NCBI GenBank assembly: GCA_038087875.1
Contig: JAXLNO010003952.1
Location: forward strand, 62,001-126,000
Reading direction: 5' to 3'
Source of the DNA: Malacoraja senta
Lineage: Eukaryota
Length of the DNA stretch: 64,000 nucleotides
Made by a program: the position numbers and the translations under genes. Shown piece by piece: positions 596-49,570 of this stretch (positions are counted from its first letter, which is position 1; each line of letters begins with the position of its first letter). The notes below the pieces were generated by a model. It did not search any database, was not told where the DNA came from, and saw nothing but the letters and a program-made list of their open reading frames with translations.

Positions 596-1574
596 CTGGA
601 AAATAAATCTTCTTCGTAACTATTTTAAAGAGGGACCCAACATGGGAGGACTGCCGAGAACAAAGATAACAAAGAGGGTCCCGGGGTTGGGGGGGGAGGG
701 GGCGCGGATAACACAGGTGAACCCAACATGGAGGGGCTGCCGAGAACAAAGAGGGACCATTGGGGACTGTAATGATTACTTTGTAACTGTGTCGACACCC
801 TATACATGGTGACTTGTGTATGTATACCTTGTGTATGTTATGCAAAGCAAAGAATTTCACTGTGACATGTCACATGTGATAATAAAGTATCAATCAATCA
901 AATAGGCGACCTTTTATTCCAAAATGTGGCGCAATGTATGACTTTGGAATCACAGGGTAACTGCAGTGAAGACAGCATTTGAAAAATTAATGGCTGAATG
1001 TAAAGTCATCAGTCAGCATTGATACAATAAAGAGCATAGAACAGTACAGCACAAGAACAGGCCCTTTGACCCACAATGTTTGTGCCGAACATGATGCCAA
1101 GACCAATTGTTATCTGCTTGCACATAATCCATATCCATCCATTCCCTGCATATACATGTGCCTATCTAAAAGTCTCTTAAATGCCACTATCATATCTGCT
1201 TCCACCACCACCTCCAGCAGCACATTCCAGTCACTCACCACCCTTGGCGTAAAACACTTGTCCTGCACATCTTTTTTTAACTTTGCCACTCATTGTAAAG
1301 CAATACCTGCTCTTATTTGATATTTCCTTCCTGGGTAAAAAGTCTGATGGTCTACCCTATCTCTACTCCTCCCAGTTTGATATATTACTGTCAGGTCTCC
1401 CTCAATCCCCGACATTCCAGAGAAAACAATCCAACTGTCCAGTCTGTCCAACTTCTCCCTGTGGCTAATACCCCACTAATCCAGGCATCATTCCGGTAGA
1501 CCTCCTCTGCATCCCAAAGGAAGCTGATTGTGCTTCATGGTCCTCTCCTGGTCTCTGCTGTTGTCAGCTGGTAC

Positions 1575-1708
1575 CTGTTCATTGAAAGGTTTTCTCTTTT
1601 TCCTCTTCTTCCAGCAACCAATTCCAAGGATGATCCCCAGGAGAATGAGAGGAACAATTACAGCTCCAGTCACGATCCTAATCTTCATATCTTCTTTCAC
1701 TGCCCTCT
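1575..1708 (-). CDS. MHC class I-like exon 5, connecting peptide, transmembrane helix and basic stop-transfer
   Basis: ccaacag|AG AGG GCA...GAA CAG|GTACCA; ERAVKEDMKIRIVTGAVIVPLILLGIILGIGCWKKRKKRKPFNEQ; phase 1 start matches the end of alpha3. Confidence 0.85.
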
Positions 1709-2025
1709 CTGTTGGCATATACAGTGGCTTGCAAAAGTATTCATACCCCTTGAACTTTTCCACATTTTGTCACGTTACAACCACAAGCGTAAATGTATTT
1801 TATTGGGATTTTATGTGATAGACCAACATAAAGTGGCACATAATTGTGAAGTGGAAGGAAAATTATACATGGTTTTCAAATTTTTTTACAAATAAAAAAC
1901 TGAAAAGTGTCGCGTGCGAAAATATTCAGCCCCCTTTACTCTGATACCCCTAAATAAAATCCAGTGCAACCAATTGCCTTCAGAAGTCACCTTATTAGTA
2001 AATAGAGTCCACTTGTGTGTAATCT

Positions 2026-2381
2026 CGGGACGACAGATGGCGCAATGGGCTAAGTGTTCGGCTGGCAACCGGAAGGTAGCCGGTTCGAATCCCGCTTGGA
2101 GTGCATACTGTCGTTGTGTCCTTGGGCAAGACACTTCACCCACCTTTGCCTGCGTGTGAATGTGTGTGAATGTGTGTGAGTGACTGGTGGTGGTCGGAGG
2201 GGCCGTAGGCACAGATTAGCAGCCATGCTTCCGTCAGTCTGCCCCAGGGCAGCTGTGGCTACAGAAGTAGCTCACCACCACCGAGTGTGACTGAGGAGTG
2301 AATGAATAATGCGATGTAAAGCGCCGAGTATTAGAAAGGCGCTATATAAATCCCATCCATTATTATTATTATTATTATTAT
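2026..2381 (+). mobile_element. tRNA-derived CORE-type SINE with L2-like 3' tail, nested in the Tc1
   Basis: A box TGGCGCAATGG, B box GGTTCGAATCCC, CORE-like TGTGTCCTTGGGCAAGACACTT, tail TGTAAAGCG...AGAAAGGCGCTATATAAAT(TTA)n, 6-7 bp TSD TAATCT(C). Confidence 0.88.
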
Positions 2382-2462
2382 TAATCTAATCTCAGTATAA
2401 ATACAGCTGTTCTGTGAAGGCCTCAGAGGTTTGTTAGAGAACATTAGTGAACAAACAACATC

Positions 2463-3484
2463 ATGAAGCCAAAGGAACACACCAGACAGGTCAGGGATAA
2501 AGTTGTGGAGAAGTTTAAAACAGGGTTAGGTTATAAATAAATATCCCAAGCTTTGAACATCTCACGGAGCACTGTTCAATCCATCATCCGAAAATGGAAA
2601 GAGTATGGCACAACTGCAAACCTACCAAGACATGGCCGTCCACCTAAACTGACAGGCCGGGCAAGGAGAGCATTGATCAGAGAAGCAGCCAAGAGGCCCA
2701 TGGTAACTCTGGAGGAGCTGCAGAGATCCACAGCTCAGGTGGGAGAATCTGTCCACAGGAAAACTATTAGTCGTGCACTCCACAAATCGGGCCTTTATGG
2801 AAGAGTGGCAAGAAGAAAGCCATTGTTGAAAAAAGCCCATAAGAAGTCCCGTTTGCAGTTTGCCACAAGCCATGTGGGGGACACAGCAAACATGTGGAGG
2901 AAGGTGCTCTGGTCAGATGAGACCAAAATTGAAGTTTTTGGCCTAAATGCAAAACGCTATGTGTGGCGGAAACCTAACACTGCACATCACCCTGAACACA
3001 CCATCCCCACTGTGAAACATGGTGGTGGCAGCATTATGCTGTGGGGATGCTTTTCTTCAGCAGGGACAGGGAAGCTGGTCAGAGTTGATGGGGGAAGATG
3101 GATGGAGCCAAATACAGGGCAATCTTGGAAGAAAACCTGTTAGAGTCTGCAAAAGACTTGAGACCGGGGCGGAAGTTCACCTTCCAGCAGGACAACGACC
3201 CTAAACATACAGCCAGAGCTACAATGGAATGGTTTAGATCAAAGCGTATTCATGTGTTAGAATGGCCCAGTCAAAGTCCAGACCTAAATCCAATTGAGAA
3301 TCTCTGGCAAGACTTGAAAATTGCTGTTCACAGATGCTCTCCATCCAATCTGACTGAGCTTGAGCTATTTTGCAAAGAAGAATGGGCAAAAATTTCAGTC
3401 TCTAGATGTGCAAAGCTGGTAGAGATATACCCCAAAAGACTTGCAGCTGTAATTGCAGCGAAAGGTGGTTCTACAAAGTATTGA
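2463..3484 (+). pseudogene. Tc1 transposase (paired-like HTH + DD34E), disrupted
   Basis: MKPKEHTRQVRDKVV... with TAA at 2538-2540 and a frameshift near 3092-3098; motifs [29 protein letters not shown]; 34 residues between the second D and E. Confidence 0.95.
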
Positions 3485-4840
3485 CTCAGGGGGGCTGAAT
3501 ACTTTTGCACGCAACACTTTTCAGTTTTTTATTTGTAACAAAATTTGAAAACCATGTATCATTTTCCTTCCACTTCACAATTATGCACCACTTTGTGTTG
3601 GTCTATCACATAAAATCCCAATAAAATACATTTACGTTTGTGGTTGTAACGTGACAAAATGTGGAAAAGTTCAAGGGGTATGAAAACTTTTGCAAGCCAC
3701 TGTATAGTGCATTTTAAACATTTAGTGATCAATAACAACATTGTAATGATTTTATTATCTAAATTAAAGTAGCACTGTTCATATCTAATTAAAAAGTAAT
3801 AACGTTTTAGATTTAAGTATTTATACAGAGGATGGATGTGCTTAAAATGATCAATGAAAAATCATTAAGTTCATATTAGCATTGAGGTATTGAGATTTTA
3901 TCTGCAGCATTTAATTAAGAATTTAAAGAATCAAGTACGTCAGAAATAGATGACTATTTACAGTGTAGAGGTCAACAAGGCCATTTTCTTATGTTGATTG
4001 TTATTATAGCAAATAAAAGTGAACCCATTTATAGTTGATAAAACTTCAAAGGTTTTAATCTTTGCTGATATTTCAATGATATCTGAGTTTAATTTTCTCA
4101 CATACACATGCTCTCTCTTTCTCTCTCTCTCCCCCTCACTGTCTCACACACATGAGCCCACACACACATAGGCACACACAGACATTAACACTACTGTCTA
4201 TTTGTACTGACCAGCAATCTTAACCATGTCAGCTTGGCCCTGGTGTGAAGATCTTTGCAGAGGTCTTGTCTGGAACAAATAAGTCAGCTACAGAACAGGT
4301 GCTGCTACTTCAGCCTGATAATATGGCACCACTATTGGTCTTTTGTGTAACTAGCTACTATCAGAAAATTAGCTAGATGCCCAAGGAAGAAGATAAGAGA
4401 CCTTGTCCAGGATCAGCCTATCTTGCTTCCACTGTTCCTACATTTGGATGGGTGAGTTAAGGGTGACATAAGAATAATTTTGACCATAAGATATTGGAGC
4501 GGAATTATGCCTTTCAAGTCCATTGAGTCTACTCCACCATTCAGTCATAGCAGATCTATTTTTTACCGCTAAATCCCATTCTCTAGCCTTCTCCCTGTAA
4601 CCTTTGTCACCCGTACTCATCAAGAACCTATCAATCTCTGCTTGAAAAATATGCAATGACTTGACCCACACAGCTGTTTGTATCAATGAATTCCACAGAT
4701 TCACCACCCTGTGACTAAAGAGATTCCTCCTCATCTCCATATTGAAGGTAGGTATTTTTATTGTGAGGCTGTGCTAGACTTTCCCATTACTGAAAACTTC
4801 CTTTCCCATCAACTAACCAGGCATTTCATTATCTGGTAGG

Positions 4841-9463: not shown

Positions 9464-9556
9464 CCACAGCTTAGTTAAGAGTGTGAGTTGAGACTGTTAT
9501 CTCAGTCCAGGAGGTTTATGGTCTCAAGTGATCAGCCTCATTGACTTGCCACTTAC

Positions 9557-9829
9557 CCTGTGGAACATTGACTCCCTGCAGCAGAGTTGCATGTTCGATG
9601 TAACAGGAGAATTTTGCCACATCTTCTCTATTCAGTTGAATTGTATTCTTCAGCTGGTAAGTCCCATCCCAATTGGGCAACAGATCACTGGATTCAGACT
9701 CATGGACCCCCTCACCATCTCTCAGCCACGTTACATCGATGGCCCGTGGCTAGAAGCCTGTGACAAGGCAGGAGAGTCTCAGTGATTGCGACCCATCACG
9801 TTTAATCCCAATAAACACCTCAGGGGTTT
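9557..9829 (-). pseudogene. MHC class I-like exon 4, alpha3 Ig C1 domain with in-frame TAG at 9750-9752
   Basis: 273 nt, ttgcag|AA...CAG G|GTAAGT; ETPEVFIGIKRDGSQSLRLSCLVTGF*PRAIDVTWLRDGEGVHESESSDLLPNWDGTYQLKNTIQLNREDVAKFSCYIEHATLLQGVNVPQ. Missed by the ORF track because of the stop. Confidence 0.93.
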
Positions 9830-10643
9830 CTGCAAGTGTAAGAAGAGTCAGAATCAGTGAAGACATGAACAAAAGCCTTCAATTGTAAGATCACTGCAAC
9901 TCACCACTTTCCCAATCAGAGTTTTTTCTCTGGCTGAACTAAGTTTTCAGCCTAGACCCAAAATGCTGGAATAACTCAGCAGGTCAGGCAGCATTCTGGA
10001 GAGAAGGAATGCCCAGAGATGCTATCTGACCCACTGAGTTACACCAACATCTTCTATCTTCAGTGTAAACCATCATCTGCAGTTCTATCTTGCACAAAGT
10101 TTACAGCCTTTTCTCTTTTCATTTTGCATTTCTGGCAAAACAACAAAACATTTAGCTTTAATATCACTGACATGCTCCTTATCTTAGCTCCAGACTTTAA
10201 CTGACAGCACAGATGAAAGGGGAATGCAGGCCCAATGGAGGAGTATAACTCACCATTGGGATTGATACTGTAGACATGATTGCTTCTACCTGTTCATGAA
10301 TCTCTGCTGAATAATAACACTAAATATTCCAAGAGGGAATGGGAGGAAGAAGTTCTTCAAATAGAGAACTGTTGGAAATTGAATGTCACCATCCCAAGGA
10401 GTAATAGAGGCAAATAGAGAATCTGATTGGGTTTCTGATCAGTTCAGCAACAGACCCTTCAGGCCACAAGGTCGGTGCTAAACATAAGACCAAGATACAT
10501 ATTCCTCCATTTCCTGAATATCTATATGACTGTGGATAAAGGACACTGGTACAATATTTATCTTTCACTTGCACTTCCTACCCACTGGTTCCATCTAAGA
10601 GGCACGTTGCCAGACAATTTACTGATACCCATGTTGTAGAACA

Positions 10644-10935
10644 GGGTGGCGAAGCGGTCGAGCTACTGCCTTACAGCGCCAGAGACCTGGGTTTGTTACT
10701 AACTACGGGTGCTTGTCTTTACAGAGTTTGTACGTTCTCCCTGTGACCTGCATGGGTTTTATCCGAGATCTTCGGTTTCCCCTCACACTCGAAAGACGTA
10801 CAAATTTGTAGGTTAATTGGATTGGTATAAATGCAAATTGTCCCTAGTGTGTGTAGGATAGTGTTAGTGTGCGGGCATGGCTGCTCGGTGCGGTCTCGGT
10901 GGGTTTCCGCGCTGTATCTCTAAACTAAACTAAAT
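10644..10935 (+). mobile_element. HE1/HER1-like V-SINE
   Basis: Same consensus as 9168-9463, (CTAAA)n tail. Confidence 0.88.
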
Positions 10936-11033
10936 AATTACTCAAGTGACAGCCTGAAGTGCATGATATTTCCCACCTGATCTATCCAGAGGATATCCTC
11001 TGGCCCATCAGTCAGAGTGCCTACGTCGTGTAC

Positions 11034-11309
11034 CTCTCCTCTGTAGTGCTTCTTGTCCACACTCCAGATATATCCGCAGCCACTTCACACAGTCCTTCTC
11101 CAGGAGATCTTTAAAATACTTGTTCATGAAGGTGTTGACGTTCCACCGATCTGCTAGCATCTGGAAATCTGGACGTAGTGCAATCCAGTGCATTCTGTCC
11201 TTGTCAAAAGCACAGGCATCCTCCCCATCATAACCCAGTCTGACAAACCCATCAGTGGAATTGTCACTGTCCACTTCACAGCCGCAGAAACCCTGCACAA
11301 AGCAAACAG
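11034..11309 (-). CDS. MHC class I-like exon 3, alpha2 domain
   Basis: 276 nt, ccccag|CT...AGA G|GTACAC; VCFVQGFCGCEVDSDNSTDGFVRLGYDGEDACAFDKDRMHWIAL...RW...LEKDCVKWLRIYLECGQEALQRR; canonical C101/C164, W133, W147, W167, Y171. Confidence 0.95.
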
Positions 11310-12377
11310 CTGGGGCTGAGGTAGGGGTGGAGGATTTGTGTTGGGGAGAGTGGATGGAAGGGAGAGGCAATTTACAAATCAGTTCTCAGCATGGTACAAA
11401 CAGGCATAACAGAACACAACATGGAGCTGTACAGCACAGGAGCAGGTTTAGCTCAGAGATACAGCGCGGAAACAGGCCCTTCGGCCCACCGAGTCCGCAC
11501 CGACCAGTGGTCCCCGCATATTAACACTATCCTACACAGACTACTTTTCTTTTCCAGCTTTCTCCACTCTACCCCATCACTCTAAATGGTCCTGGTCTCA
11601 TATGTTTTCTGTCCATTTTTCCACAGCATGCTGCCTGACTCGTTGAGTTCCTCCTGTTTGTTTTAAATTCAGATTGGCAGCATCTGCAGTTTGCTGTGAC
11701 TCCATCTTAGCACAATGGATGATCAATGTGGATTCAGTGAGCAGAAGGGCCGGTTTCCATGATGTGTGACTCAATGACCCATGGTCTATATACTGAGGGC
11801 ATGGACTAACCTCAAGTGTTATGGGGGGGGAGCTTTACTGTTGCGGATGTAACACTAAAGGAGTTCTGCTGTGTCAGAAGGGTGGAACTCAGATTCTGCA
11901 CTGTCGTACATAAAGAACAGAGGAAGAAGTGCATTGTCAGATGGGCAATGCTACAGAGCCAACAGGTCAGTCTGAAGGTTAAGGCAATGCAGATGGGAAG
12001 TACATCAAGGCTGTTGCACTGTGTGGGATTGCTACACCCTCTGAGGATTGTTGCCAATATTGAGGGGATGCTGGATTAACACAATATTATTACTGAGGGA
12101 ATACCTCATAGTCACCATCAACCAGCTTAAATCAAGATCCCATCTCTAGATGATCAGGCTATAAATAAACTAATGGTTTCTCCCTCATTCCAGCCCAACA
12201 AAACAGATGATCCAATCCATCCACTTATTACTGGTGTTGAATATCAAATGCTTAACCCATAAAGAGACTATCACCAGCCAACTGTTATGACTGTGTGTTC
12301 AGCAGTTAGGACACATTAAATATAGACGATGGGCCGTGTCTCTATCAAAATGTTATGGAGTAAATGTCTGAAACAGC

Positions 12378-13000
12378 ATCAATGGTGCTGAAGTGAAAAA
12401 GGTTGAGAGTTTCTGGTTCCCCTACTGCCTCAGGAGACTAAGGAAATGCGGCATCTCCAATGACTCTTACAAACTTCTACAAATGTGCCATAGAAAGCAT
12501 ACTGACAGGTTGCATCACAACTTAGTTTGGAAAGAGTTCTGCCCAAGACCGCTGGAAATTGCAGAGAGGTGGAGATGTAGCACAATCGATCACACAAACA
12601 TGATTCCCCACCAGTGAATCCATCTGTATTTCAACTGGTTCAGGAAAGCAGACAACATAATCAAAGATTTGTCCCGTTCTGGTCACTCCTTCTTCCTGCA
12701 GAAGGTACGTAAGCATTAAAGCGTGCACCACCAGACTCAGTAACTGTTTCCTCCCCTATGTTATCAGGTTTCTGAACAGTCCTCCCTTATGCTAGGGTTC
12801 ACCTCAACCCCATTGTAGACACTGGACTTTGTCTCTGGCACTGGTACATTACAATGCTGAGAACTACATTCTGCACTCTTTGCTCTACCTATTGTACGAG
12901 TTTGGTTTGATTGTATTTATGAATAGTTTTCTTTGATGTGATTGACTAATGCAAAAAAAGTGTATCAGAGAATCATGTGTCAACAATAAAAGTAAAACAA
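12378..13000 (+). mobile_element. Rex1/Babar LINE 3' fragment
   Basis: Degenerate LRRLRK.G...L..FY.C.IES.LT.CIT...G motif set and ...gtgtcaacaataaa tail. Confidence 0.8.
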
Positions 13001-13054
13001 AATCCATCTGTGTCATCACTGAGTGTCTACCCCAGGTCCGCTCACGACACTTAC

Positions 13055-13315
13055 TCGAGATACCATGTTGCTGTTGGTAGACTATCTCAGCATTTCCTCT
13101 GACAATCCCACGAAAACCTGCAACTGTGATGGCCATTGAATCCCAGTGATCCTGCGGGAAAGACTGGGCCATCCATCGCTGTCTGGGAACAGCCCGCTCT
13201 AGTGTGCTGTCAAAATATGCTATCTGGACGTCATCCAGCATTGCTACCATACTGTACTCAGGCAGCTCATTCAATCCATGGTTCAACAGGTAGTAAAATG
13301 CAAGATGGTGTAAAT
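13055..13315 (-). CDS. MHC class I-like exon 2, alpha1 domain
   Basis: 261 nt, tgcag|AT...TCG A|GTAAGT; DLHHLAFYYLLNHGLNELPEYSMVAMLDDVQIAYFDSTLERAVPRQRWMAQSFPQDHWDSMAITVAGFRGIVRGNAEIVYQQQHGIS, open frame. Confidence 0.93.
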
Positions 13316-17253: not shown

Positions 17254-17305
17254 CAGAGGAGACAGTGGCCACACCGTAAGTGTTCAGTAAGGTAAAAAGA
17301 AGCAT
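17254..17305 (-). CDS. MHC class I-like exon 1, signal peptide (MLLFTLLNTYGVATVSS)
   Basis: ATG at 17303-17305, 52 nt, hydrophobic peptide, phase-1 donor G|GTAAGC; joins alpha1 in frame as SS-D-LHHL; sits just downstream of an SXY-like module. Confidence 0.85.
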
Positions 17306-23090: not shown

Positions 23091-25279
23091 AAGGTATAGA
23101 TTATATTTCGGGTCAAGACCCTTCTTCAGTTATATTCATGATGTGACATGCATAGACATTCCTGAATGTTACCCAAACCATCGTGAGCTACTTTGTGACG
23201 GTGCTTGCCCTCTCCTATAACGTCTCTGCTGCCTGGGTGAAGCAGGACAGGACACAAGCTTTGGGACACGGTGTGAAGCTGTTGCCGTCTGTCCCAGCCT
23301 GGTAAAAACCTGGATGGAGTGGATGTGGAGAGGATGTTTCCACTAGTGGGAGAGTCTAGGACCAGTGGCCACAGCCTCAGAATTAAAATACATTCCTTTA
23401 GGAAGAAGATGAGCAGGAATTTCTTAAGTCAGAAGGTGGTGAACTGTGGAATTCATTGCCACAGACAGCTGTGGAGGTCAAGTCAATGGACACTTTTCAG
23501 GAGGAGATTGATAGATTCTTGATTGATACAGGTGTCAGAGGTAATGGGGAGAAGGCAGGAGAATGGGTTTGAGAGGGAAAGATAGATAGTCATAGAGAGA
23601 TACAGTGTGGAAACAGGCCCTTCGGCACAGCATGTCCCATCTACACTAGTCCCTCCTGTCCACATTTGATCCATATCTCTCCGAACATGTCCTATCCATA
23701 TACCTGTTTAAGTGTTTCTTAAATTTTGCGATAGTCCCTGTCTGTACCTCCTCTGGCAGCTTGTTCCATACACCTACCACCCTTTGTATGAAAAATATAC
23801 CTGTCAGATTCCTATTAAAGCTTTAGCCCTTCACCTTGAACTTATGTCCTCTGCTCCCCGATTCACCTACTCTGCGCAAAAGACTCAACCATATCTATTC
23901 AAATCATGATTTTATACACCTCTATTAGATCATCCCTCATCCTCCTGTGCTCCATGAAATAGAGTACCAGCCTACTCAACCTCTCCCTATAGCTTGGCCC
24001 TCTAGTCCTGAGGCAACATCCTCGTAAATCTTCACTGTACCCTTTCCAGTTTAATGACATCTTTCCTATTACATGGTGCCCAGAACTGAATACAATACTC
24101 TAAATGCGGCCTCATCAACTTCTTATACAACTGCAACATGACCTCCCAACTTCTGTACTCAGCCTGACCTCGCAATATTACTCCAGCACTCAGTTACTCC
24201 AGCACTCTGTGAAACGTCACAGAACAGGGCAAGATTAGCAAGTTTGCTGATGATACAGAAGTGAGTGGATTTGCAAATAGTGAAAATGGTTGTGAAAGAT
24301 TGCAGCAGGATCTCGATCAATTAGCCAGGTGGGCAGAGGAATGGTTGATGGTTGCATGGTTCCTTGAAGGTTGAGTCGCTGGTATATTAGGTGGTCAAAA
24401 AATATTTTGGCACTTTGTCCTTCATCAGTCAGAGTATTGAGTAAAGAAGCTTAAAGATGTTAAGGGAAAAAGAGTAGCAAAGTCAAATGTGGGTCCCTTG
24501 AAGGCAGACACGGGTGAAATTATTATGGGCAACAAGGAAATGGCAGAAGAGTTGAATAGGTACTTCGGATCTGTCTTCACTAAGGAAGACACAAACAATC
24601 TCCCAGCTGTACTGGAGGACAGAGGATCTAAGGGGGTAGAGGAACTGAAAGAAATTTTCATTAGGCGAGAAATAGTATTGGGTAGGCTAATGGGACTGAA
24701 GGATGATAAATCCCCTGGACCTGATGGTCTGCATCCCAGGGTCCTCAGGGAGGTGGCTCTAGAAATAGTGGATGCATTGGTGATCATTTTCCAATGTTCA
24801 ATAGATTCAGGATCAGTTCCTGTGGATTGGAGGATAGCTAATGTTATCCCACTTTTCAAGAAAGGAGCGAGAGAGAAAACAGGGAATTACAGACCAGTTA
24901 GCCTGACTTCGGTGGTGGGAAAGATGCTGGAGTCAATTATTAAAGAGGTAATAATGGGGCATTTGGATAGCAGTAAAAGGATTAGTCCGTCAACATGGAT
25001 TTATGAAAGGGAAATCATGCTTGACTAATCTTCTGGAATTTTTTGAGGATGTGACAAGTAAAATGGATGAAGGGGTGCCAGTGGATGTAGTGTACCTGGA
25101 CTTTCAGAAAGCAGTTGATAAGGTCCCGCACGGGACACTGGTGGCTAAAATTAGAGCTCATGGTATTGGGGGTAAGGTGTTGACATGGATAGAAAATTGG
25201 TTGGCAGACCGGAAGCAAAGAGTAGGAGTGAACGGGTCCTTTTCAGAATGGCAGTAAGTGGCGAGTGGAGTGCCGCAAG

Positions 25280-28200
25280 CAGTGGCGGACTGGGTCTAAA
25301 AATATTGGTTGCCAGGAGACAAAGGGGGCCCACCCACAACTACAATGCTATCATTTAATTTTCATAACGAATAAATAATATTTTCAAAAAATACATATGG
25401 AAAAAAGGGTACAATTTAAAATTTTTGTGAAAAAAATGGTTCTTAGTAATTACAGTGTACATGTACTGTACATATTACTGGCAGTAGATACCGAATGTAA
25501 ATACAGAATGTTATAATTTTTTTTTTTTTTAATTTTAAGTAATTGGTTGATATTTTAAAATAATTTACTGCACAATTTACACATTAACAGATAGTTGAAA
25601 AGCACAATAGAGCATTGCATGCAGTCCACTATATTAAGAGCAATCGTTTGTGTTCGCTAGATGATTGTGCGAATCTGCCAATAATTGCTTCTGCATCCAA
25701 TTCATCTAACAATTCCTTTTCAATGGTTAGCAACATGTATGATTCCAAATTCTCCTCAGACAGCGAATTTCTTAACCTTGTCTTTATGATCTTTAGCTTT
25801 GAAAATGTCCTCTCACATTGGACTTGAGTAACTGATAGTGTGCAGATGACTTTATAAAGTTGATAAAGGTTATCATATGCCTTGTCATGAAGTCTGTTGG
25901 ATGCCAGAATGTTTAGTACACTCGATGGGCAAGTGCTGCACATTTTACAATTGTTGCAACTGGAATCCATATTCTCACCAGCATTAAGCAACTTTAATAC
26001 ATCAAAGTTTGAAGCAAAAGAAAACAATTCCAATATTACTTGATCTTTGCTGATTTGTGGAAACAGCTTAATAATACCTTCCAATGCTTCATCTTCAAGG
26101 CCCTTCTCTGCAATAGTTTTAAACTTTGCTGGGTCCAAGCAGGACAAATCTTTATACAACTGTTTGTGTTGTACAAAGCGTGATTCTAGTGACTGGACAA
26201 TGCGATCCATTATTGGGTTAAACACATTTACTCAAAAATCAGCTAGAGAATCTGAGGAATTTCTTTTATCATCAATAAGCTCATCTGCCATTATTTTCTT
26301 CTTCCTCTGCCTCTTAACTGGCAATGCTGTTTCCAACGCAATAATTTCCAATGTTTGATTTTCATCCATATTCATCTGTGAAATCCTGTCATTACATTTC
26401 TTTACAAATTCCAAAGCCTTGCTGTGAACGTTATTAAATGTTCTTGTCTGTTCCTTCAACTTTGTTGTAGCTGAATCTACCAAACTCCATGCAGTAAACA
26501 TATCTAACCCACTTGTCTGTCGATAACTTGATAACGGGGTTGTAGTTTCAAATATATACAAGTAAAGAAATGCTGTCAATATGGTTTCAAACTTTAGAAG
26601 ACTTTGAAGTAAAACATTTGCTACATGTTTTGTTTTTGCATCAAACTTTTCTGAATCTTGTATCATTGATAATCATGTCAATAGATTTACGAAAGTACTG
26701 GCAGCGGCATCATCAAAACTTCCAAATATAGTTGTTGCTGCATTGGATTTTCCTGACCATCTGGTCTCACCAATTAGCTTTAATCGTTTCATTTTTTTCT
26801 TATCCTAGATGTTTTCCAACAACTTCTATCCATACAGCCATTCTCTTGTATGATGCTTTCACAAAAGTTGCTCTATTCTGGAGCAAATTGAAAAAAGAAA
26901 CTGCAGGCTCACAACATTTGTTGTTTCAGTTATCACCAAATTCAAGACATGGGCATAGCACCATTTCACTTGCACTTTATGTGCAATGTGACGAATAAAA
27001 CCGTATTGTATTGTATTGTATATGAACATGTTGATCAGCCACATCAGCAATTTTACTTTGTAAACCATTATACTGGCCATAGTAGCTTGCAGCGCCATCT
27101 GTGCTATCAGATAAACATTTTTTTTTTTGTGATATAAATTTTTATTAGAAGCAAACATATTACAATGTAGAGTAACATATTATAATAGAAGAAAAAACTT
27201 TTCATATACATCAATCACTCATACATTATTAAATTTGTCAATTGTCAGTTATTTCTGCTTCTAGTGTTTTTTTTTTATATAGATAGAAAAAGAAAAATAG
27301 AGAGAAAGAAGAAAGAAAAGAGAGAAAGAAGAATTACAATATCAAAAAAGAAAAAGAGGTGGAATGAATAACTTATAATACGTCATAGGAGATAAGTTCG
27401 TAGGTTATGAAATATAATTACATCTAATCCTGAGTTCAAGCTTCAGTCGGGCTTTCGCGCTGGGCCACTCTATCCCTTCAAATAGGCAATGAATGGAGCC
27501 CATATTTTAACAAAAAGTTCTTGCTTGTCCATTAAGACAAGTCTAATTCTTTCTAGATGTAGGGTCTCCGACATTTCCACAATCCACATTTTAATTGTGG
27601 GGGTTGTAGGGCCTTTCCAGAATTTTAATATTAATTTTTTCCCAGTTATTATACTGTAGTCAAGGAAGTTTCTTTGGCTTGTTGTGAGTGTTAAACTTTG
27701 TTCTGATATCCCAAGTATTATTAATTTTGAGTCTGGAGCCAATTTGGTATTAACAACTTCAGAGATTATTTGAAAAATATCAGTCCAGTAATTTTTAATT
27801 TTTATACAATTTGCAAAGGTATGTGTTAAATTGGCCTCTAGGTGCAGGCATTTATCACATATAGGAGAAATATGTGGGAAAATTCTATTTAGTTTTATTT
27901 TGGAATAATGTAATCTGTGTAAGACTTTAAATTGTATTAAAGCATGTCTGGCATTTAACGAACATTGATGTATATGTTGTAAACTTTCGTCCCAAATATC
28001 TTTCGTAATAGGATAACCTAACTCATTTTCCCATTTATGTATATATAGTTCCATCGGTGGTTCCTCATTATTTAGGAGAATGTTATAAATATAAGCTATT
28101 AATTTTTCAGTGTTAGGATGCGTATTCAAACATTCATCAAGAATTTCTGGTTCCCTAGTCCTATAAACTTGTGTATTGGATTTAACATAATCTCTAATTT

Positions 28201-30343
28201 GTAAATATCTGAAAACGTTATTTGAGTGTAGTCCATGATTCTGTTGTAACTCTTGAAATGACAGAAAGATGCCTTCCCTATAAAGATGTCCAATCCTTTT
28301 AATTCCCTGATTTTTCCATTGTATAAAACCTCTATCCAATATTGATGGCTTGAATAGAGGATTATTTACAATGGGAAGGCATAGTGGTATATTATTCAGT
28401 TTTAAAGCCTTTTTTAATTGTTTCCAAATTCGTATTCCACTATGTATTATAGGGTTTTCCTTATAGGTTTTTTTATGCAATTTTGTGGTAGCAAATATAA
28501 TCGAACCAATTTCAAAAGGTAAACAGTCTTCCTTTTCCATCCTTAACCATTCTGGTTGTTGGTCCATTTCTTCCAGCCAGAAATTCATGTTTTTAATATG
28601 GACTGCCCAAAAATAAAATAAGAAATTTGGCAAGGCCAAACCTCCGTTGCTCTTTGACTTCCATAAATGTTTTTTACTTATTCTATGATTCTTATAATCC
28701 CAAATAAAGCTTGAAACAATGGAGTCGACTTTTTTGAAAACGTTTTTTGGAATATATATCGGAATTAATTGAAATAAATATAGTAGTTGCGGTAAGAAAA
28801 TCATTTTTATAGCATTAATTCTACCAAGCATTGAAATAGGAAGTGTTTTCCAGTACTGAATATGTTTGTGTAATTTATTAAGTAAGGATGGAAAATTTTG
28901 TTTAAATAAAGAGGTATATGTCTTAGTTACATAGATTCCTAAATATTTAAGTTTATCTTTAACTATTTTAAAAGGGGATTGTTGTATTGTATTTAATTTG
29001 AATTTTGTTATTGGCATAATTTCACTTTTATTCCAATTAATCCTATATCCTGAGAACTGACCAAATTGTGTTATTAGATTTAATAGATTTGGAATACTAG
29101 TTTCTAACTTTGTAATATAGTTAAACATAATACAGATAAACATTTTTGGGGGTCAATTTTAAGATGCTGTAATGTTTCAATCAATAGATCAAAAAGTCCC
29201 TGTCCTGTACCATCATTACTTGGCACAACTGAAAGTAGTCGCTCACAGATAATACCTTTAAGCACATACCGAATAATAATTGTGGACGTTTTATACATTT
29301 AGCATCAATGAGTCCTGCTGCTGCATCGCTGATGACACATATTTTATATCCGGTTTATATTTGTTAACCTTGAGAGATATGCAAGCACTACTAGTTTCAT
29401 CTGTAAGGCTATTACTTTTACGATACTTAATGTTCATCACTGAGAACAATGATTCACAAGAATATATACATGAAAAAATCCTGAATATTGATAATACCTC
29501 TCACATAGCTTTAACAATAACTTATGTTTAAGCACATATGCTGAAGAACAGGCTTCATTAACTTTTCATATAATATTTTCAATGCAGTCACTGATAACCA
29601 GATAATTACTATGGATAACTGGAGCCTACCCTGGTGTAACAATTACGTTTTTCTAATATCTAAATTTGAACTCACATGTAGCTGAATTTGGATATTGTTT
29701 ACCGATAATTTTTTTTTACGATCCTTGAAAAACTATATAAAAAGAATGGTAAAGGAGCCACGCCACGTCTGGCCGCCTGGTGAATGATGCAACAAGAAGT
29801 TATATGCAACAATGATCTTTTATACATATACAAAAACTAAAAATTAAAAACATCTCTTCAATAAGGGGGGGGGGGGGGGCAGGCTGAGGCTTTTCAAGTG
29901 TGTGTGACAAAAATACGGACAAATCTTTGATACAAAATTTTCTCACTTGCCAACCGAAATTTTTTGGGAGTATATTATTATTTGGTGTCATTTAAGTATT
30001 GGGAGAACCTTTTCAAAGAATTAAAAATCACACTGGAGCGGTAAAATCAGAGAATATTGTAAGTAATTATTATAAGATAAGTCCTGTGAGATTGAATGAA
30101 TGTAAATTTTTGTGACTAATTTTAACTCAAAAGTAGTTCATCCCTGTTGATACTGTGGATATTTTTTAAAATTAAACTTTCAGTGTAATTCTAGCTGCCA
30201 GATACATCTTATTCCTTTTTATTACTAAAACAGTTATCTGTGTTTGTTTGTTTATTGCATTTTTATTTGATATAGGGGGGGGGCACTTCATCAGGGGCCC
30301 ACTTGCCATCGGGCAAGCTGATACCCTGGCCAGTCCGCCACTG
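25280..30343 (-). mobile_element. hAT transposon (ZMYM1-like/Tip100-type transposase relic), internally deleted
   Basis: 14-bp TIR CAGTGGCGGACTGG / CCAGTCCGCCACTG; 8-bp TSD GCCGCAAG at 25272-25279 and 30344-30351; minus-strand pieces DSTDGAAS, WCYAHVLNLVI, TQVQCERTFSKLKIIKTRLRNSL (hAT dimerisation domain) with stops and frameshifts. Confidence 0.93.
27122..29132 (-). mobile_element. 5'-truncated L1-type LINE inserted in the hAT transposase
   Basis: 557-aa open ORF2 C-terminal part (KYLGIYV, LGRINAIKM, GGLALPNF, CDKC...H...C knuckle), AATAAA and poly(A), about 14-15-bp TSD CAGATAAACATTTT(T) at about 27108 and about 29133. Confidence 0.93.
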
Positions 30344-31355
30344 GCCGCAAGGCTCGGTGTTGGGGCCGCAATTGTTTACCATATATATTAATGATTTGGA
30401 AGAGGGAATTAGGAGCAACACTAGCAGGTTTGCGGATGACACATAGCTGGGTGGCAGTGTGAACTGTGAAGAGGATGTTAGGAGGTTGCAGGGTGACCTG
30501 GACAGGTTGAGTGAGTGGGCAGATGCGTGGCAGATGCAGTATAATATAGATAAATGTGAGGTTATCCACTTTGGCAGCAAAAACAAGGGGGCAGATTATT
30601 ATCTCAATGGGGTTGGGTTAGGTAAGGGGGAGGTGCAGCGAGACCTGGGCGTCCTTGTACACCGGTCACTGAAAGTTGGCGTGCAGGTACAGCAGGCAGT
30701 GAAGAAAACTAATGGAATGTTGGTCTTCATAACAAGAGGATTTCAGTATAGGAGTAGAGAGGTTCTTCTGCAGTTGTATAGGGGTCTGGTGAGACCACAT
30801 CTGGAGTATTGTGTACTGTTTTGGTCTCCTAATTTGAGGAAGGACATCCTTGTGATTGAGGCAGTACAGCGTAGGTTCAAGAGATTGATCCTTGGGATGG
30901 TGGGATTGTCATATGAGGAAAGATTGAAAAGACTAGGCTTGTATTCACTAGAGTTTAGAAGGATGAGGGGGAATCTTATAGAAACATATAAAATTATAAA
31001 AAGACTGGACAAGCAAGATGCAGGAAAAATATTCCCAATGTTGGGCGAGTCCAGAAACAGGGGCCACAGTCTTAGAATAAAGGGGAGGTCATTTAAGACT
31101 GAGGTGAGAAAAAAGTTTTCACCCAGAGAGTTGTGAATTTATGTAATTCCCTGCCACAGAGGGCAGTGGAGGCCAAGTCACTAGATGGATTTAAGAGAGA
31201 GTTAGATAGAGCTCTAGGGGCTAGTGGAGTCAAGGGATATGGGGAGAAGGCAGGCATGGGTTATTGATAGGGGACATGATCATAATGAATGGCGGTGCTG
31301 GCTCGAAGGGCCGAATGACCTCCTCCTGTACCTATTTTCTATGTTTCTATGTTTC

Positions 31356-37749: not shown

Positions 37750-39252
37750 TTAAAAGTAACGGTGTGCAAGCAGGCTGGAGGAGCGGGCAAAGGCATTGCC
37801 ACAGAGCGGGTAGGTGAAGGGGTGCTGACCGGTGTGGACTCGCCGGTGCTCCAGCAGGTGGTCAAGTCGGGTGAAGCCCTTTCCACAGGACGGGCAGGGG
37901 AAGGGACGCTCACCGCTGTGGGTACGCCGGTGCTGCCACAGGCTGGACCTGCTGGTGAAACCCTTGCCACACTCAGCGCACACATAGGGTGTCTCTCCGG
38001 TGTGTATCCGCTGGTGCTCCCGCAGCCCCCGTGCTCTCTTGTTACAGTGGGAGCAGCTGCTCGCCGGCGTGGGTCCGCTGGTGCTGCCGCAACCCCCGCG
38101 AGCTGTCAAACTCCTCACCGCAGTACGGGCAGTCGTAGGGCTGGCCACTTTTGTGCACGCGCTGGTAAGACAGGGGGTGGGAGGCCATGGCAAAGCGCTC
38201 TCCACGCACCGGGCTGGGGATGGGACCGTCGCCGGCGTGCACCCGCTGGTGGGACAGATGATAGGTGGAGCGGGTGAAGCCCTTGCCGCACTGGGTGCAG
38301 GTGTAGGGGCGCTCACCAGTGTGGGTGCGCTGATGGAACAGCAGGTGACCGGACTGGGTGAAGCCCTTGCCGCACTGGGCGCAGGTGTAGGGGCGCTCGC
38401 CGGTGTGGGTGCACTGGTGGGACAGCAGGGTGCAGGAGCGGGTGAAGCCCTTGCCGCACTGGGTACAGGTGTAGGGGCGCTCGCCGGTGTGGGTGCGCTG
38501 GTGGGACAGCAGGTTGCCAGACTGGATGAAGCCCTTGCCGCACTGGGTACAGGTTTAGGGGGCGCTCGCCGGTGTGGGTGCGCTGGTGCACCTGCAGGCT
38601 TCTGGAGTGAGTGAAGCCCTTGCCACACTGGGCGCAGGTGTAGGGACGCTCGCCGGTGTGGGTGCGTTGGTGCACCAGCAGGATGCTGGAGTGGGTGAAG
38701 CCTTTGCCGCACTGGGTGCAGGTGTAGGGGCGCTCGCCTGTGTGGGAGCGCTGGTGGGACAGCAGGTTGCTGGAGGAGTTGAAGCCCTTACCGCACTGGG
38801 CGCAGGTATAGGGGTGCTCGCCAGTGTGGGAGCGCTGGTGGGACAGCAGCTTGCTGGAGCGGGTGAAGCCCTTGCCGCAGTCGCTGCAGGTGTAGGGGCG
38901 CTCGCCAGTGTAGGTGCGCTGGTGGGACAGCAGGTTGCTGGAGCGGGTGAAGACCTTGCCGCAGTCGCTGCAGGTGTAGGGTCGTTCCCCGGTGTGCAGG
39001 CGCCTGTGCATCTTCAGTTCCGGCGGCGACTTGAAGCTCTTGCCGCAGTCGGAGCAGTCGAAGGGGCGTTCTCCCGTGTGAACCCGCCGGTGGATCTCCA
39101 GCCGGCTCGGGTACTGCCAGGCCTTGCCACACACGTCGCACTCATAACGCTTCTCCTTGTTGTGCCCCCTCATGTGGTCCTCCATCAAAGCGCAGCCCCT
39201 CGAAGCTCAGCCCGCACACCGAGCAGATGGGGGGTGGGGGGGAGGGGCTCAT
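37750..39252 (-). pseudogene. KRAB-less tandem C2H2 zinc-finger gene (about 17-18 finger units, several degenerate), frameshifted
   Basis: Acceptor cctgcag| near 39324; ATG 39250-39252 MSPSPPPPICSVCGLSF then a +1 shift at 39186-39200; seven TGERPY-linked fingers in ORF 38313-39188; +1 C and TAC>TAA near 38554; further fingers to LLPL* (38042) and relic fingers to 37750; AATAAA on minus at 37692-37697. Confidence 0.9.
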
Positions 39253-40013: not shown

Positions 40014-40218
40014 NNNNNNNNNNNNNNNNNNNNNNNNNNNNNNNNNNNNNNNNNNNNNNNNNNNNNNNNNNNNNNNNNNNNNNNNNNNNNNNNNNNNNNN
40101 NNNNNNNNNNNNNNNNNNNNNNNNNNNNNNNNNNNNNNNNNNNNNNNNNNNNNNNNNNNNNNNNNNNNNNNNNNNNNNNNNNNNNNNNNNNNNNNNNNNN
40201 NNNNNNNNNNNNNNNNNN
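40014..40218. other. Assembly gap (205 N)
   Basis: N run; contiguity between the two halves of the window is not proven. Confidence 1.
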
Positions 40219-48019: not shown

Positions 48020-49570
48020 TCAATGTACTTAAGGAAGTAGCCCCAGAAATAGTGGATGCATTTGTGATAATTTTTCAAAACTTTAGATTGTGGAGTAGTT
48101 CCTGAGGATTGGAGGGTAGCTAATGTAACCCCACTTTTTAAAAAGGGAGGGAGAGAGAAAACGGTGAATTACAGACCAGTTAGTCTAACGTCGGTAGTGG
48201 GGAAACTGCTAGAATCAGTTATTAAAGATGGGATAGCAGCACATTTGGAAAGTGGTGAAATCATTGGACAAAGTCAGCATGGATTTATGAAAGGTAAATC
48301 ATGTCTGACGAATCTTATAGAATTTTTCGAGGATGTAACTAGTAGAGTGGATAAGGGAGAACCAGTGGATGTGTTATATCTGGACTTTCAGAAGGCTTTC
48401 GACAAGGTCCCATATAAGAGATTAGTATACAAACTTAAAGCACACGGCATTGGGGGTTCAGTATTGATGTGGATAGAGAACTGGCTGGCAGACAGGAAGC
48501 AAAGAGTAGGAATAAACGGGTCCTTTTCACAATGGCAGGCAGTGACTAGTGGGGTACCGCAAGTCTCAGTGCTGGGACCCCAGCTATTTACGATATATAT
48601 TAATGATTTGGACGAGGGAATTGAATGCAACATCTCCAAGTTTGCAGATGACACGAAGCTGGGGGGCAGTGTTAGCTGTGAGGAGGATGCTCGGAGGCTG
48701 CAAGGTGACTTGGATAGGCTGGGTGAGTGGGCAAATGCATGGCAGATGCAGTATAATGTGGATGTGAGGTTATCCACTTTGGTGGCAAAAACAGGAAAGT
48801 CGACTATTATCTGAATGGTGGCCGATTAGGAAAAGGGGAGTGCAATGAGACCTGGGTGTCATGGTACACCAGTCATTAAAAGTAGGCATGCAGGTGCAGC
48901 AGGCAGTGAAGAAGGCGAATGGTATGTTAGCATTCATAGCAAAAGGAATTGAGTATAGGAGCAGGGAGGTTCTACTGCAGTTGTGCAGGGTCTTGGTGAG
49001 ACCACACCTGGAGTATTGCGTACAGTTTTGGTCTCCTAATCTGAGGAAAGACATTCTTGCCATAGAGGGAGTACAGAGATGGTTCACCAGCCTGATTCCT
49101 GGGATGTCAGGACTTTCATATGAAGAAAGACTGGATAGACTCGGTTTGTACTCGCTAGAATTTAGAAGATTGAGGGGGGATCTTATAGAAACGTACAAAA
49201 TTCTTAAGGGGTTGGACAGGCTAGATTCAGGAAGATTGTTCCCGATGTTGGGGAAGTCCAGAACAAGGGGTCACAGTTAAAGGATAAGGGAGAAATCTTT
49301 TAGGACGGAGATGAGGAAATCATTTTTCACACAGAGAGTGGTGAATCTCTGGAATTCTCTGCCACAGAAGGTAGTTGAGGCCAGTTCATTGGCTATATTC
49401 AAGAGGGAGTTAGATGTGGCCCTTGTGGCTAAAGGGATCAGGGGGTATGGAGAGAAAGCAGGTACAGGATACTGAGTTGGATGATCAGCCATGACCATAT
49501 TGAATGGCGGTGCAGGCTCGAAGGGCCGAATGGCCTACTCCTGCACCTGTTTTCTATGTTTCTATTTTTC
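48020..49570 (+). mobile_element. CR1 LINE ORF2 (RT) and 3' UTR, 5' truncated
   Basis: NYRPVSLTSVVGKLLE, SQHGFMKGKSCLTNL, YLDFQKAFDKVP, SGVPQVSVLGP, ISKFADDTKL, RPHLEYCVQFWSP; frameshifts near 48770 and 48840. Confidence 0.95.

What the first reader, a model, noticed from the sequence alone, without database searches (positions are those of the whole stretch)
9557..13315. Non-classical class I with a hydrophobic, CD1-like predicted groove
Seen (manual HLA numbering): peptide-terminus anchors are largely lost (Y7F, Y59H, Y/R84Q, Y123A, T143L, K146R, Y159L; only W147 and Y171 kept). Groove-facing positions are apolar: M24, M63, V67, F70, I73, V74, I80, V81, V95, C99, V114, L116, M152, F156. The N86 glycan site is absent and a new sequon NST lies at about 107. 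The beta2m contacts Q96, D119, G120 and D122 remain. Established: cartilaginous fishes have several non-classical class I lineages (UBA-UFA), one described as CD1-like. Inference: a lipid or hydrophobic-ligand presenter; lineage not assignable by eye.
Basis: partly seen in the sequence, partly recalled or inferred. Interest (0 to 1): 0.7.

Follow-up and report, generated by a model that had tools for sequence, protein, structure and literature searches.

The report
Dead skate copy, UGA-sister class I
This is a real skate gene for an MHC class I-like molecule with an unusually greasy, peptide-anchor-free groove, from an old shark-and-ray lineage next to the lipid-binding UGA gene, but this copy is disabled by a stop codon and a transposon.

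Summary
The gene lies on the minus strand and is larger than the stretch given: five exons from 17305 to 1488, all with AG/GT splice sites.

Seven of the nine peptide-terminus anchors are replaced. 25 of 35 groove positions are apolar. The N86 sequon is gone and an NST sequon sits in the alpha2 loop.

These features are not decay. They are invariant in orthologues from 12 shark and ray species, which form a clade (support 100/100). That clade is sister (95/88) to the lineage of PDB 9ch4, titled "shark nonclassical MHC class I, UGA". It is far from UFA (8gm8) and is not a CD1 or MR1 orthologue.

Between skate and sawfish Ka/Ks is 0.22, and alpha1-alpha2 is more conserved than alpha3. The sawfish orthologue lies in the published MHC-Ib cluster.

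This copy is most likely dead. TAG replaces the Tyr of GFYP in alpha3, and contigs of two runs show the same TAG. A Tc1-like transposon sits 11 bases before the last exon.

A hydrophobic or lipid ligand for the lineage is inferred, not shown.

The scan has already reported the same dead gene on several other pieces of this genome, and one intact copy. I found no published name for the lineage.

The parts
17254..17305 (-). Leader exon: ATG plus 17 codons and one split base (MLLFTLLNTYGVATVSS), followed by a GTAAGC donor.
   Evidence: Read directly. The same exon is present in the little skate locus L001 at 100-151. It resembles the shark leaders of P0166 and P0168. Splice context.
13055..13315 (-). 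Alpha1 exon (261 nt), with AG acceptor and GTAAGT donor.
   Evidence: Pfam MHC_I. Against 9ch4_A E=2.1e-21. 93% amino-acid identity to P0001.
11034..11315 (-). Alpha2 exon (282 nt). Both cysteines of the disulfide are present (HLA positions 101 and 164). It ends ...EALQRR before a GT donor, with no frameshift.
   Evidence: Pfam MHC_I E=1.7e-16. PDB matches.
11254..11262 (-). NST sequon in the alpha2 loop. It is the only N-glycosylation sequon of the protein and is conserved in the lineage (NST in 12 rows, NTT in P0172).
9557..9829 (-). Alpha3 exon (273 nt, Ig C1-set), with AG acceptor and GTAAGT donor.
   Evidence: Pfam C1-set E=6.9e-09. Against 9ch4_A E=6.9e-15.
9750..9752 (-). In-frame TAG (codon 225) replacing the Tyr of the GFYP motif. 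It lies 193 nt upstream of the last exon-exon junction.
   Evidence: Tyr stands here in P0001 and in the other relatives that cover the motif. Contigs of runs X1 and X2 cover the site with no difference. A related species' contig reads TAC.
1722..3702 (+). Tc1-like transposon (about 1.98 kb) with terminal inverted repeats and a TA duplication, and its transposase split into two ORFs. It is inserted in the last intron, 11 nt upstream of the acceptor of the final exon, and is absent from the little skate copy.
   Evidence: Pfam HTH_Tnp_Tc3_2 (E=6.1e-26) and DDE_3 (E=1.9e-11).
1488..1708 (-). Connecting peptide, transmembrane and cytoplasmic exon, ending in TGA. The tail has no Y-x-x-hydrophobic motif. 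It is 9 nt shorter than the little skate copy.
   Evidence: tblastn with P0001. Splice and frame. Indel. Tail motifs.

Best explanation
The stretch is the core of a five-exon, 15.8-kb MHC class I heavy-chain gene of a skate. It belongs to an ancient, conserved, MHC-linked non-classical lineage of sharks and rays. That lineage is the sister paralogue of UGA (the lineage of PDB 9ch4) and is distinct from UFA, CD1 and MR1.

In this lineage seven of the nine peptide-terminus anchors are replaced and the groove floor and walls are almost wholly apolar. Alpha1-alpha2 is kept more strictly than alpha3. The intact protein most likely pairs with beta2-microglobulin at the cell surface and holds one invariant hydrophobic (lipid-like) ligand, or a narrow set of them, for a conserved receptor. 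This step is inferred.

The copy in this window is most likely a pseudogene. A TAG in alpha3 would end the chain after alpha1-alpha2 and 27 residues of alpha3. It lies 193 nt before the last exon junction, so the transcript should undergo nonsense-mediated decay. A Tc1-like transposon has also landed in the branch-point region of the last intron.
For: Gene structure and lesions:
- Exons and splice sites.
- TAG at 9752-9750. It is seen unchanged in contigs of two runs.
- Transposon at 1722-3702, 11 nt from the acceptor and absent in the little skate locus.

Lineage:
- The closest protein is P0001 (Leucoraja erinacea XP_055486430.1, GFYP intact), 91% identical. The window is collinear with its locus at 86-92% nucleotide identity through the introns.
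- Orthologues in 11 further species are 54-72% identical to P0001. All other class I proteins are at or below 36%.
- Careful tree: lineage 100/100; window with P0001 100/100; rays together 98/95; lineage plus the UGA lineage 95/88.
- P0010, of the UGA lineage, matches 9ch4_A at 466 bits without gaps. PDB titles name 9ch4 as UGA and 8gm8 as UFA.
- Both lineages occur in the same species. They lie 42 kb apart on one little skate scaffold.
- The sawfish orthologue is LOC127585976, marked MHC-Ib in the supplement of PMC10751288.

Constraint:
- Ka/Ks between skate and sawfish is 0.22-0.23, and 0.16-0.17 in alpha1-alpha2.
- Window to shark orthologues: alpha1-alpha2 68-73% identical, alpha3 52-61%.

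Groove:
- The anchor pattern F-H-Q-A-L-R-W-L-Y is invariant in the lineage, apart from W147L in three sharks.
- 25 of 35 groove positions are apolar. Mean hydropathy is 1.49, against 0.52 for UGA, 0.70 for UFA and -0.14 for classical-type rows. This is the highest of the 121-sequence set.
- Groove positions are somewhat more conserved than the rest of alpha1-alpha2 (0.88 against 0.82, permutation p=0.04).

Expression of the lineage: contigs of a probable RNA run from a related species stop exactly at the alpha3 and alpha1 exon borders and read TAC (Tyr) at the stop site.

UGA and UFA are reported to bind lipids (PMC12562908, citing a personal communication).
Against: - No ligand, cavity shape or beta2-microglobulin pairing was tested. 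The model coordinates could not be analysed.
- The backbone model matches peptide-binding class I, MR1 and YF1 about as well as UGA (Z 26-28).
- Lipid binding by UGA rests on a review's citation of a personal communication, not a primary paper.
- Apart from the stop and the transposon, this copy looks no more decayed than the annotated little skate copy. Changes polarised with sawfish are 9 non-synonymous and 5 synonymous here, against 10 and 5 there. So the stop is recent, or both copies are relaxed.
- Runs X1 and X2 may come from the individual that was assembled, so a segregating null allele is not excluded.
- No RNA data for this organism were found.
Confidence: 0.8

Rival explanations
1. 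The gene is alive. The TAG would then be an assembly error or a null allele segregating in the population, and this locus makes a normal heavy chain in other individuals.
For: All five exons, all splice sites, both disulfide pairs and every lineage-specific groove residue are intact. There is only one nonsense codon. This copy has diverged no more than the annotated little skate copy.
Against: Contigs of two runs (two sample records) cover 9521-9901 and 9703-9893 with zero differences and show no alternative letter at 9750. A Tc1-like element has also displaced the branch-point region of the last intron. Earlier scan notes report the same kind of stop on several other pieces of this genome (not checked here).
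Confidence: 0.08
2. The lineage's groove does not hold a lipid. It might hold hydrophobic peptides or lipopeptides (as chicken YF1*7.1 and some macaque class I do) or a small apolar metabolite. Or it might be collapsed, so that the molecule is only a ligand for a receptor, as in MIC, HFE or TL.
For: The model's backbone is of ordinary class I type. Chicken YF1*7.1 carrying acylated glycine (Z 26.9), TL (26.4) and MR1 (26.3) score almost as high as UGA (28.3). W147 and Y171 are kept. There is no endosomal sorting motif of the kind CD1b-d use to sample lipids. Alpha2 alone is most similar to MR1 (64.6 bits).
Against: Only two charged residues remain among 35 groove positions, and the residues that hold peptide termini are gone. 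The MR1 Schiff-base lysine K43 is alanine here, and A/T/I/C across the lineage. The sister lineage UGA is reported as lipid-binding (PMC12562908). High conservation of groove positions argues against an unused groove.
Confidence: 0.3
3. It is an orthologue of UFA or of tetrapod CD1, that is, the known 'CD1-like' shark lineage the reader recalled.
For: Apolar groove. Pfam MHC_I_3 gives a weak match to alpha2 (E=7.3e-05, below the cut-off). MHC-Ib linkage, as published for UFA (PMC10751288).
Against: UFA is 8gm8. Its lineage (P0023, 305 bits to 8gm8) is a separate clade, 25% identical to the window in alpha1-alpha2. The one CD1b-like protein in the set is a long unplaced branch. No CD1 chain appears among the best 50 structural matches.
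Confidence: 0.03

Closest known systems
Shark non-classical MHC class I UGA (PDB 9ch4; skate and sawshark relatives P0154/P0156 and P0010)
   Same: Sister clade (95/88) and best match in the PDB for alpha1 and alpha3 and for the whole model. Shares Q/R84, A123, L159, W147, Y171, an apolar 143 and an apolar groove. The two genes are neighbours on a little skate scaffold.
   Different: Only about 40% identical in alpha1-alpha2, against 68-81% between the window and its orthologues in other species. UGA keeps Y7, Y59 and K146, keeps the N86-type sequon, and in skates has a YQNI tail. This lineage has F7, H57 (HLA position 59) and R146, an NST sequon in the alpha2 loop instead, no tyrosine motif, and a clearly more apolar groove (1.49 against 0.52). 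Both lineages occur in the same species, so they are paralogues.
Shark non-classical MHC class I UFA (PDB 8gm8), described as CD1-like
   Same: An elasmobranch MHC-Ib with lost peptide anchors and an apolar groove. Both UFA and this lineage are reported or mapped in the MHC-Ib cluster (PMC10751288).
   Different: A separate clade with a strongly remodelled alpha2. 25% identity in alpha1-alpha2.
Tetrapod CD1
   Same: A class I-like heavy chain whose groove-lining positions are mostly apolar. By inference, a hydrophobic ligand.
   Different: No specific sequence or structural affinity. No Y-x-x-hydrophobic endosomal motif. The backbone is modelled as ordinary class I. Orthology could not be supported.
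[quoted passage not shown]
   Same: Alpha2 alone scores best against MR1 (64.6 bits). Alpha1-alpha2 is more conserved than alpha3, the MR1-like pattern of a monomorphic presenter.
   Different: The ligand-anchoring lysine K43 of MR1 is alanine here. The polar and aromatic cradle is replaced by aliphatic residues. No MR1 sequence was in the tree.
Chicken YF1*7.1 (PDB 3p73, 9eb2-9eb6)
   Same: Class I-type backbone with a narrow apolar groove that holds acylated ligands. High structural score (Z 26.9). A good functional analogy.
   Different: A bird lineage with no special sequence relationship (28-29% identity).

Membership tests
MHC class I heavy chain (fold and gene structure) | Alpha1 and alpha2 (Pfam MHC_I) plus a C1-set alpha3, each on its own phase-1 exon, with a leader and a TM exon. 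| tested here: met
   Pfam. Exons and splice sites. AlphaFold model of the 91%-identical P0001: pLDDT 89 with class I topology.
Classical peptide-presenting class I (UAA type) | Conserved peptide-terminus anchors Y7, Y59, R/Y84, F/Y123, T143, K146, W147, Y159, Y171. | tested here: not met
   The window reads F, H, Q, A, L, R, W, L, Y. Classical-type rows read Y, Y, R, F, T, K, W, Y, Y in the same columns.
UGA-sister lineage (annotated 'MR1-like' in NCBI; no published name found) | Falls inside the clade of P0001 and P0164-P0174. | tested here: met
   100/100 support for the clade and for window+P0001.
UGA-sister lineage (annotated 'MR1-like' in NCBI; no published name found) | Lineage signature: F7, H59, Q84, A123, L143, R146, L159, Y171; an NST sequon in the alpha2 loop; no N86 sequon. 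| tested here: met
UGA-sister lineage (annotated 'MR1-like' in NCBI; no published name found) | Open reading frame able to give a full heavy chain. | tested here: not met
   TAG at codon 225, confirmed in contigs of two runs.
UGA (PDB 9ch4) | Orthology with 9ch4 and its relatives. | tested here: not met
   A sister clade, not inside it. About 40% identity. Both lineages are present in little skate and in sawshark.
UFA (PDB 8gm8) | Orthology with 8gm8 and its relatives. | tested here: not met
   A separate clade. 25% identity in alpha1-alpha2. PDB title.
CD1 | Groups with CD1 by sequence or structure. | tested here: inconclusive
   Only one CD1b-like sequence was available, and it is a long unplaced branch. 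No CD1 chain appears in the best 50 Foldseek or VIA matches.
CD1 | Tyrosine-based endosomal sorting motif in the tail (present in CD1b, c and d). | tested here: not met
   No Y-x-x-hydrophobic motif in any tail of the lineage.
CD1 | Binds lipid in a deep apolar groove. | not testable with these tools
   There is only a sequence proxy: 25 of 35 aligned groove positions are apolar.
MR1 | Lysine 43, which forms the Schiff base with the ligand. | tested here: not met
   Alanine aligns with MR1 K43 (alignment). That column is A/T/I/C across the lineage.
MHC-linked class Ib cluster of elasmobranchs | Maps in the MHC-Ib cluster. | tested here: inconclusive
   Shown for the sawfish orthologue and, through linkage to a UGA-type gene, for the little skate copy. 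The window itself holds no other MHC gene.

The most novel reading that the evidence does not exclude
The lineage, though not this dead copy, may be a so far unnamed non-classical class I family of sharks and rays. It would be the sister of UGA, older than the shark-ray split, single- or low-copy outside skates, and would have the most apolar and most conserved groove of all elasmobranch class I molecules. Its likely role would be to present one invariant lipid-like ligand to an innate-like lymphocyte population. In skates it would have been duplicated, with most copies decaying.
Probability: 0.35. Interest if true: 0.55.

Novelty: new member of a known kind. Interest (0 to 1): 0.3.

Why it matters
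Sharks and rays are the oldest living vertebrates with an MHC. When lipid- or metabolite-presenting class I molecules arose is an open question.

This lineage shows a second UGA-type paralogue with an even greasier groove that has been kept for the whole history of sharks and rays. It is therefore a good candidate for ligand and structure work, best done on an intact orthologue.

The copy in this window adds little. It documents that skates have duplicated the gene and that copies are being lost through a nonsense mutation and a transposon insertion.

Tried and rejected
- Suspected frameshift at the end of alpha2. Another frame reads VDKKHYRGE, but the frame continues to ...EALQRR followed by a GT donor, as in all relatives. 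Rejected.
- Hydropathy scan for a TM exon found only a repeat-like (probably SINE-derived) stretch. The true exon came from tblastn with P0001.
- Automatic leader scan missed the leader because of its threshold. It was then read directly.
- Paper searches for 9CH4 and 8GM8, for a primary UFA/UGA paper and for a name such as UHA found nothing relevant. The supplement of PMC10751288 carries no UFA/UGA labels, only 'MHC-Ib'.
- P0178, the best non-lineage hit, is not UGA: it has no PDB match at E below 1e-60.
- Structure comparison does not separate functions. UGA, classical, YF1, TL and MR1 chains all score Z 26-28.
- MR1, PROCR and a proper CD1 set could not be put in the tree, because no such sequences were available to put in it.
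- The look-up of sequencing runs was unreachable twice. When it answered, no run on record as RNA held the stretch.
Full report
**What is in the sequence**

The finding lies on the minus strand. Three-frame translation and motif mapping give three phase-1 exons, each with an AG acceptor and a GT donor:
- alpha1, 13315-13055
- alpha2, 11315-11034
- alpha3, 9829-9557

They match Pfam MHC_I (alpha2 E=1.7e-16) and C1-set (E=6.9e-09). They also match solved class I chains. This is far beyond chance.

The gene is larger than the stretch given. A leader exon (ATG at 17305, 17 codons, GTAAGC donor) was read directly. It is shared with the little skate locus. One exon for the connecting peptide, transmembrane segment and tail lies at 1708-1488.

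The spliced reading frame is 1089 nt. It holds one internal stop: TAG at 9752-9750, codon 225, in place of the Tyr of the GFYP motif. I first suspected a frameshift at the end of alpha2. It is not real: the frame runs to ...EALQRR and then a GT donor.

Rows of classical type read Y-Y-R-F-T-K-W-Y-Y at the columns for HLA positions 7, 59, 84, 123, 143, 146, 147, 159 and 171. This validates the columns.

The beta2-microglobulin contact residues Q96, D119, G120 and D122 are present. The N86 sequon is absent. The only sequon is NST in the alpha2 loop.

**Which gene it is**

A search of 1.8 billion representative proteins with alpha1 found one close hit, P0001 (E=4e-47). [quoted passage not shown] Its GFYP motif is intact.

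The window from 17402 down to 5 is collinear with that locus at 86-92% nucleotide identity, introns included. Exons are 95% identical. So the window holds a recent paralogue, or the orthologue of a very close species. The tools code the organism's name.

A search with P0001 found one protein or a few in each of 11 further species:
- Rays: sawfish, manta, stingray.
- Sharks: sawshark, sevengill, catshark, zebra shark, epaulette shark, bamboo shark, smooth-hound, basking shark.

These are 54-72% identical to P0001. There is then a sharp drop to 36% or less for all other class I proteins.

In a careful maximum-likelihood tree (53 rows, 270 columns):
- These proteins and the window gene form one clade (100/100).
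- The window gene pairs with P0001 (100/100).
- The rays group together (98/95).
- The whole clade is sister (95/88) to a second clade (100/99) that holds P0010 and the skate proteins P0011, P0154 and P0157.

P0010 matches PDB chain 9ch4_A at 466 bits without a gap. The PDB title of 9ch4 is 'Crystal structure of shark nonclassical MHC CLASS I, UGA'.

The other solved shark class Ib, 8gm8, is titled UFA. Its lineage (P0023, 305 bits to 8gm8) is a separate clade. It is only 25% identical to the window gene in alpha1-alpha2.

The window gene is therefore neither UFA nor UGA. It belongs to the sister paralogue of UGA. Both lineages occur in the same species (sawshark and skates). In the little skate they lie 42 kb apart, on the same strand of one scaffold.

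The sawfish orthologue occupies exactly the coordinates of LOC127585976. The supplement of Verissimo et al. 2023 (PMC10751288) marks that gene as MHC-Ib within the MHC.

I found no published name for this lineage. Two sources bear on its neighbours:
- Verissimo et al. 2023 (PMC10751288) describes UFA as CD1-like.
- A 2025 review (PMC12562908) names both UFA and UGA as CD1-like and lipid-binding, citing a personal communication.

**The odd groove is a conserved property, not decay**

- The nine-position anchor pattern is invariant in all members. The one exception is W147L in three orectolobiform sharks.
- At 35 positions that line the pockets of HLA class I, the lineage has 24-25 apolar residues and two charged ones. 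Mean Kyte-Doolittle hydropathy is 1.49.
- The same measure is 0.52 for the UGA lineage, 0.70 for UFA, 0.88 for one CD1b-like protein and -0.14 for classical-type rows. No sequence outside the lineage reaches its value.
- Groove positions are slightly more conserved than the rest of alpha1-alpha2 (0.88 against 0.82, permutation p=0.04).
- Alpha1-alpha2 is more conserved than alpha3 (68-81% against 52-73% between the window and its orthologues in other species). This is the reverse of classical class I. It is typical of a monomorphic presenter such as MR1.
- Ka/Ks between skate and sawfish is 0.22-0.23 for alpha1-alpha3 and 0.16-0.17 for alpha1-alpha2.

**How the intact protein probably works (inferred)**

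An AlphaFold model of P0001 residues 1-283, built with a 49-sequence alignment, has mean pLDDT 89 and canonical class I topology.

Its best structural match is UGA: Z 28.3, rmsd 1.9 A over 267 residues. Chicken classical class I (27.5), lipid-binding chicken YF1*7.1 (26.9), TL (26.4) and MR1 (26.3) are practically tied. No CD1 chain is among the best 50 matches. The backbone is therefore class I-like rather than CD1-like, and fold comparison cannot decide the ligand.

The MR1 Schiff-base lysine K43 aligns with alanine. The tails of the lineage contain no Y-x-x-hydrophobic motif, whereas skate UGA tails carry YQNI.

My reading is a beta2-microglobulin-associated surface molecule that holds an invariant hydrophobic, probably lipid-like, ligand. 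Its trafficking would be surface or early-recycling rather than late-endosomal. About 0.5 of my belief goes to lipid. About 0.3 goes to other apolar ligands or a groove that is not used.

**Why this copy is most likely dead**

- The TAG would truncate the chain after alpha1-alpha2 and 27 residues of alpha3. The second Ig cysteine and the membrane anchor would be missing.
- The TAG lies 193 nt upstream of the last exon junction. By the usual 50-55 nt rule, the transcript should undergo nonsense-mediated decay (established knowledge).
- Contigs of two runs of the same organism cover 9521-9901 and 9703-9893 without a single difference. No alternative letter is seen at 9750. The stop is therefore not an assembly slip, although both runs may come from the assembled animal.
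- A 1.98-kb Tc1-like element lies at 1722-3702. It has terminal inverted repeats and a TA duplication. Its split transposase matches HTH_Tnp_Tc3_2 and DDE_3.
- The element is inserted 11 nt upstream of the acceptor of the last exon, where the little skate copy has uninterrupted intron. It displaces the branch-point region and may impair splicing (inferred).

Ka/Ks between the window copy and the little skate copy is 0.57, against 0.22 over the long term. Changes polarised with sawfish are symmetrical: 9 non-synonymous and 5 synonymous on the window branch, 10 and 5 on the other. Constraint therefore seems relaxed in both skate copies, and the stop is recent.

A third, degenerate little skate copy also exists (P0177).

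**Expression of the lineage**

No run on record as RNA holds the stretch. One run guessed to be RNA, from a related species, gives two contigs:
- The first ends exactly at both alpha3 exon borders (9557-9830).
- The second ends at the alpha1 acceptor (13315).
- Each carries further letters that do not lie on the window's introns.
- The alpha3 contig is 94-95% identical to the window. It is distinct from the little skate copy and reads TAC (Tyr) at the stop site.

This looks like spliced mRNA of an intact relative. It is suggestive, not proof.

**Relation to earlier work of this scan**

Earlier notes on other pieces of the same genome describe the same gene. They call it the 'UGA-sister' lineage, with a greasy groove and a stop codon in the third domain, in one case also with a transposon. 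They also report one intact copy.

I reached the lineage placement independently. I verified the UGA and UFA names from PDB titles. I did not check the other pieces themselves. The scan has thus found this before on other DNA, and the present window adds one more dead copy.

**Verdict**

The lineage is of moderate interest as an apparently unnamed, very conserved relative of UGA. The copy itself is an ordinary young pseudogene.

Noticed in passing
window 1722-3702: A Tc1-like DNA transposon with 28-nt terminal inverted repeats and a TA target duplication. Its transposase is split into two overlapping ORFs (2553-3143 and 3098-3484), so the element is itself defective.
   Followed up: yes
window 37750-39188 (minus strand): Long ORFs encoding tandem C2H2 zinc fingers (Pfam zf-C2H2 and zf-H2C2_2, E down to 4e-56). 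Long ORFs also overlap them on the opposite strand, probably because of the repetitive GC-rich finger array.
   Followed up: partly
window 9893-10154, 10548-10940 and 11334-11595 (introns): Short interspersed repeats in the introns have word depths hundreds to thousands of times those of the flanking DNA in all three runs laid. Similar copies occur throughout the window.
   Followed up: partly
window 48164-48814 (+) and 25629-26225 (-); also 24489-25028 (+), 27470-29143 (-), 30459-31136 (+): Remnants of other mobile elements. The ORF at 48164-48814 matches reverse transcriptase (RVT_1, E=5.6e-26). The one at 25629-26225 matches a hAT dimerisation domain. The ORFs at 27470-29143 (557 aa) and 30459-31136 have no Pfam match; the one at 24489-25028 was not scanned.
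   Followed up: partly
window 40014-40218: An assembly gap or masked run of 205 N, flanked by a simple CT-rich repeat.
   Followed up: no
L003 and L001 (little skate scaffold JAMYXN010000384.1): A UGA-type gene model (P0157) spans 55 kb (3053-57869). It lies 42 kb from the lineage copy P0001 (99976-112152) on the same strand, which suggests the two lineages arose as neighbours.
   Followed up: partly
window 9557-9830 and 13085-13315, run X25: Contigs of a small 2018 run of a related species end exactly at exon borders and carry an intact Tyr codon. This looks like spliced mRNA of an intact relative of this gene.
   Followed up: partly
proteins P0195, P0204 and P0210 (Callorhinchus milii): Chimaera class I-like proteins share L143 and Y171 with the lineage (and L147 with three of its sharks) and also match Pfam MHC_I_3. 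They form their own long-branched clade, placed near the UGA, UFA and sister lineages with weak support. They could be a holocephalan counterpart.
   Followed up: no
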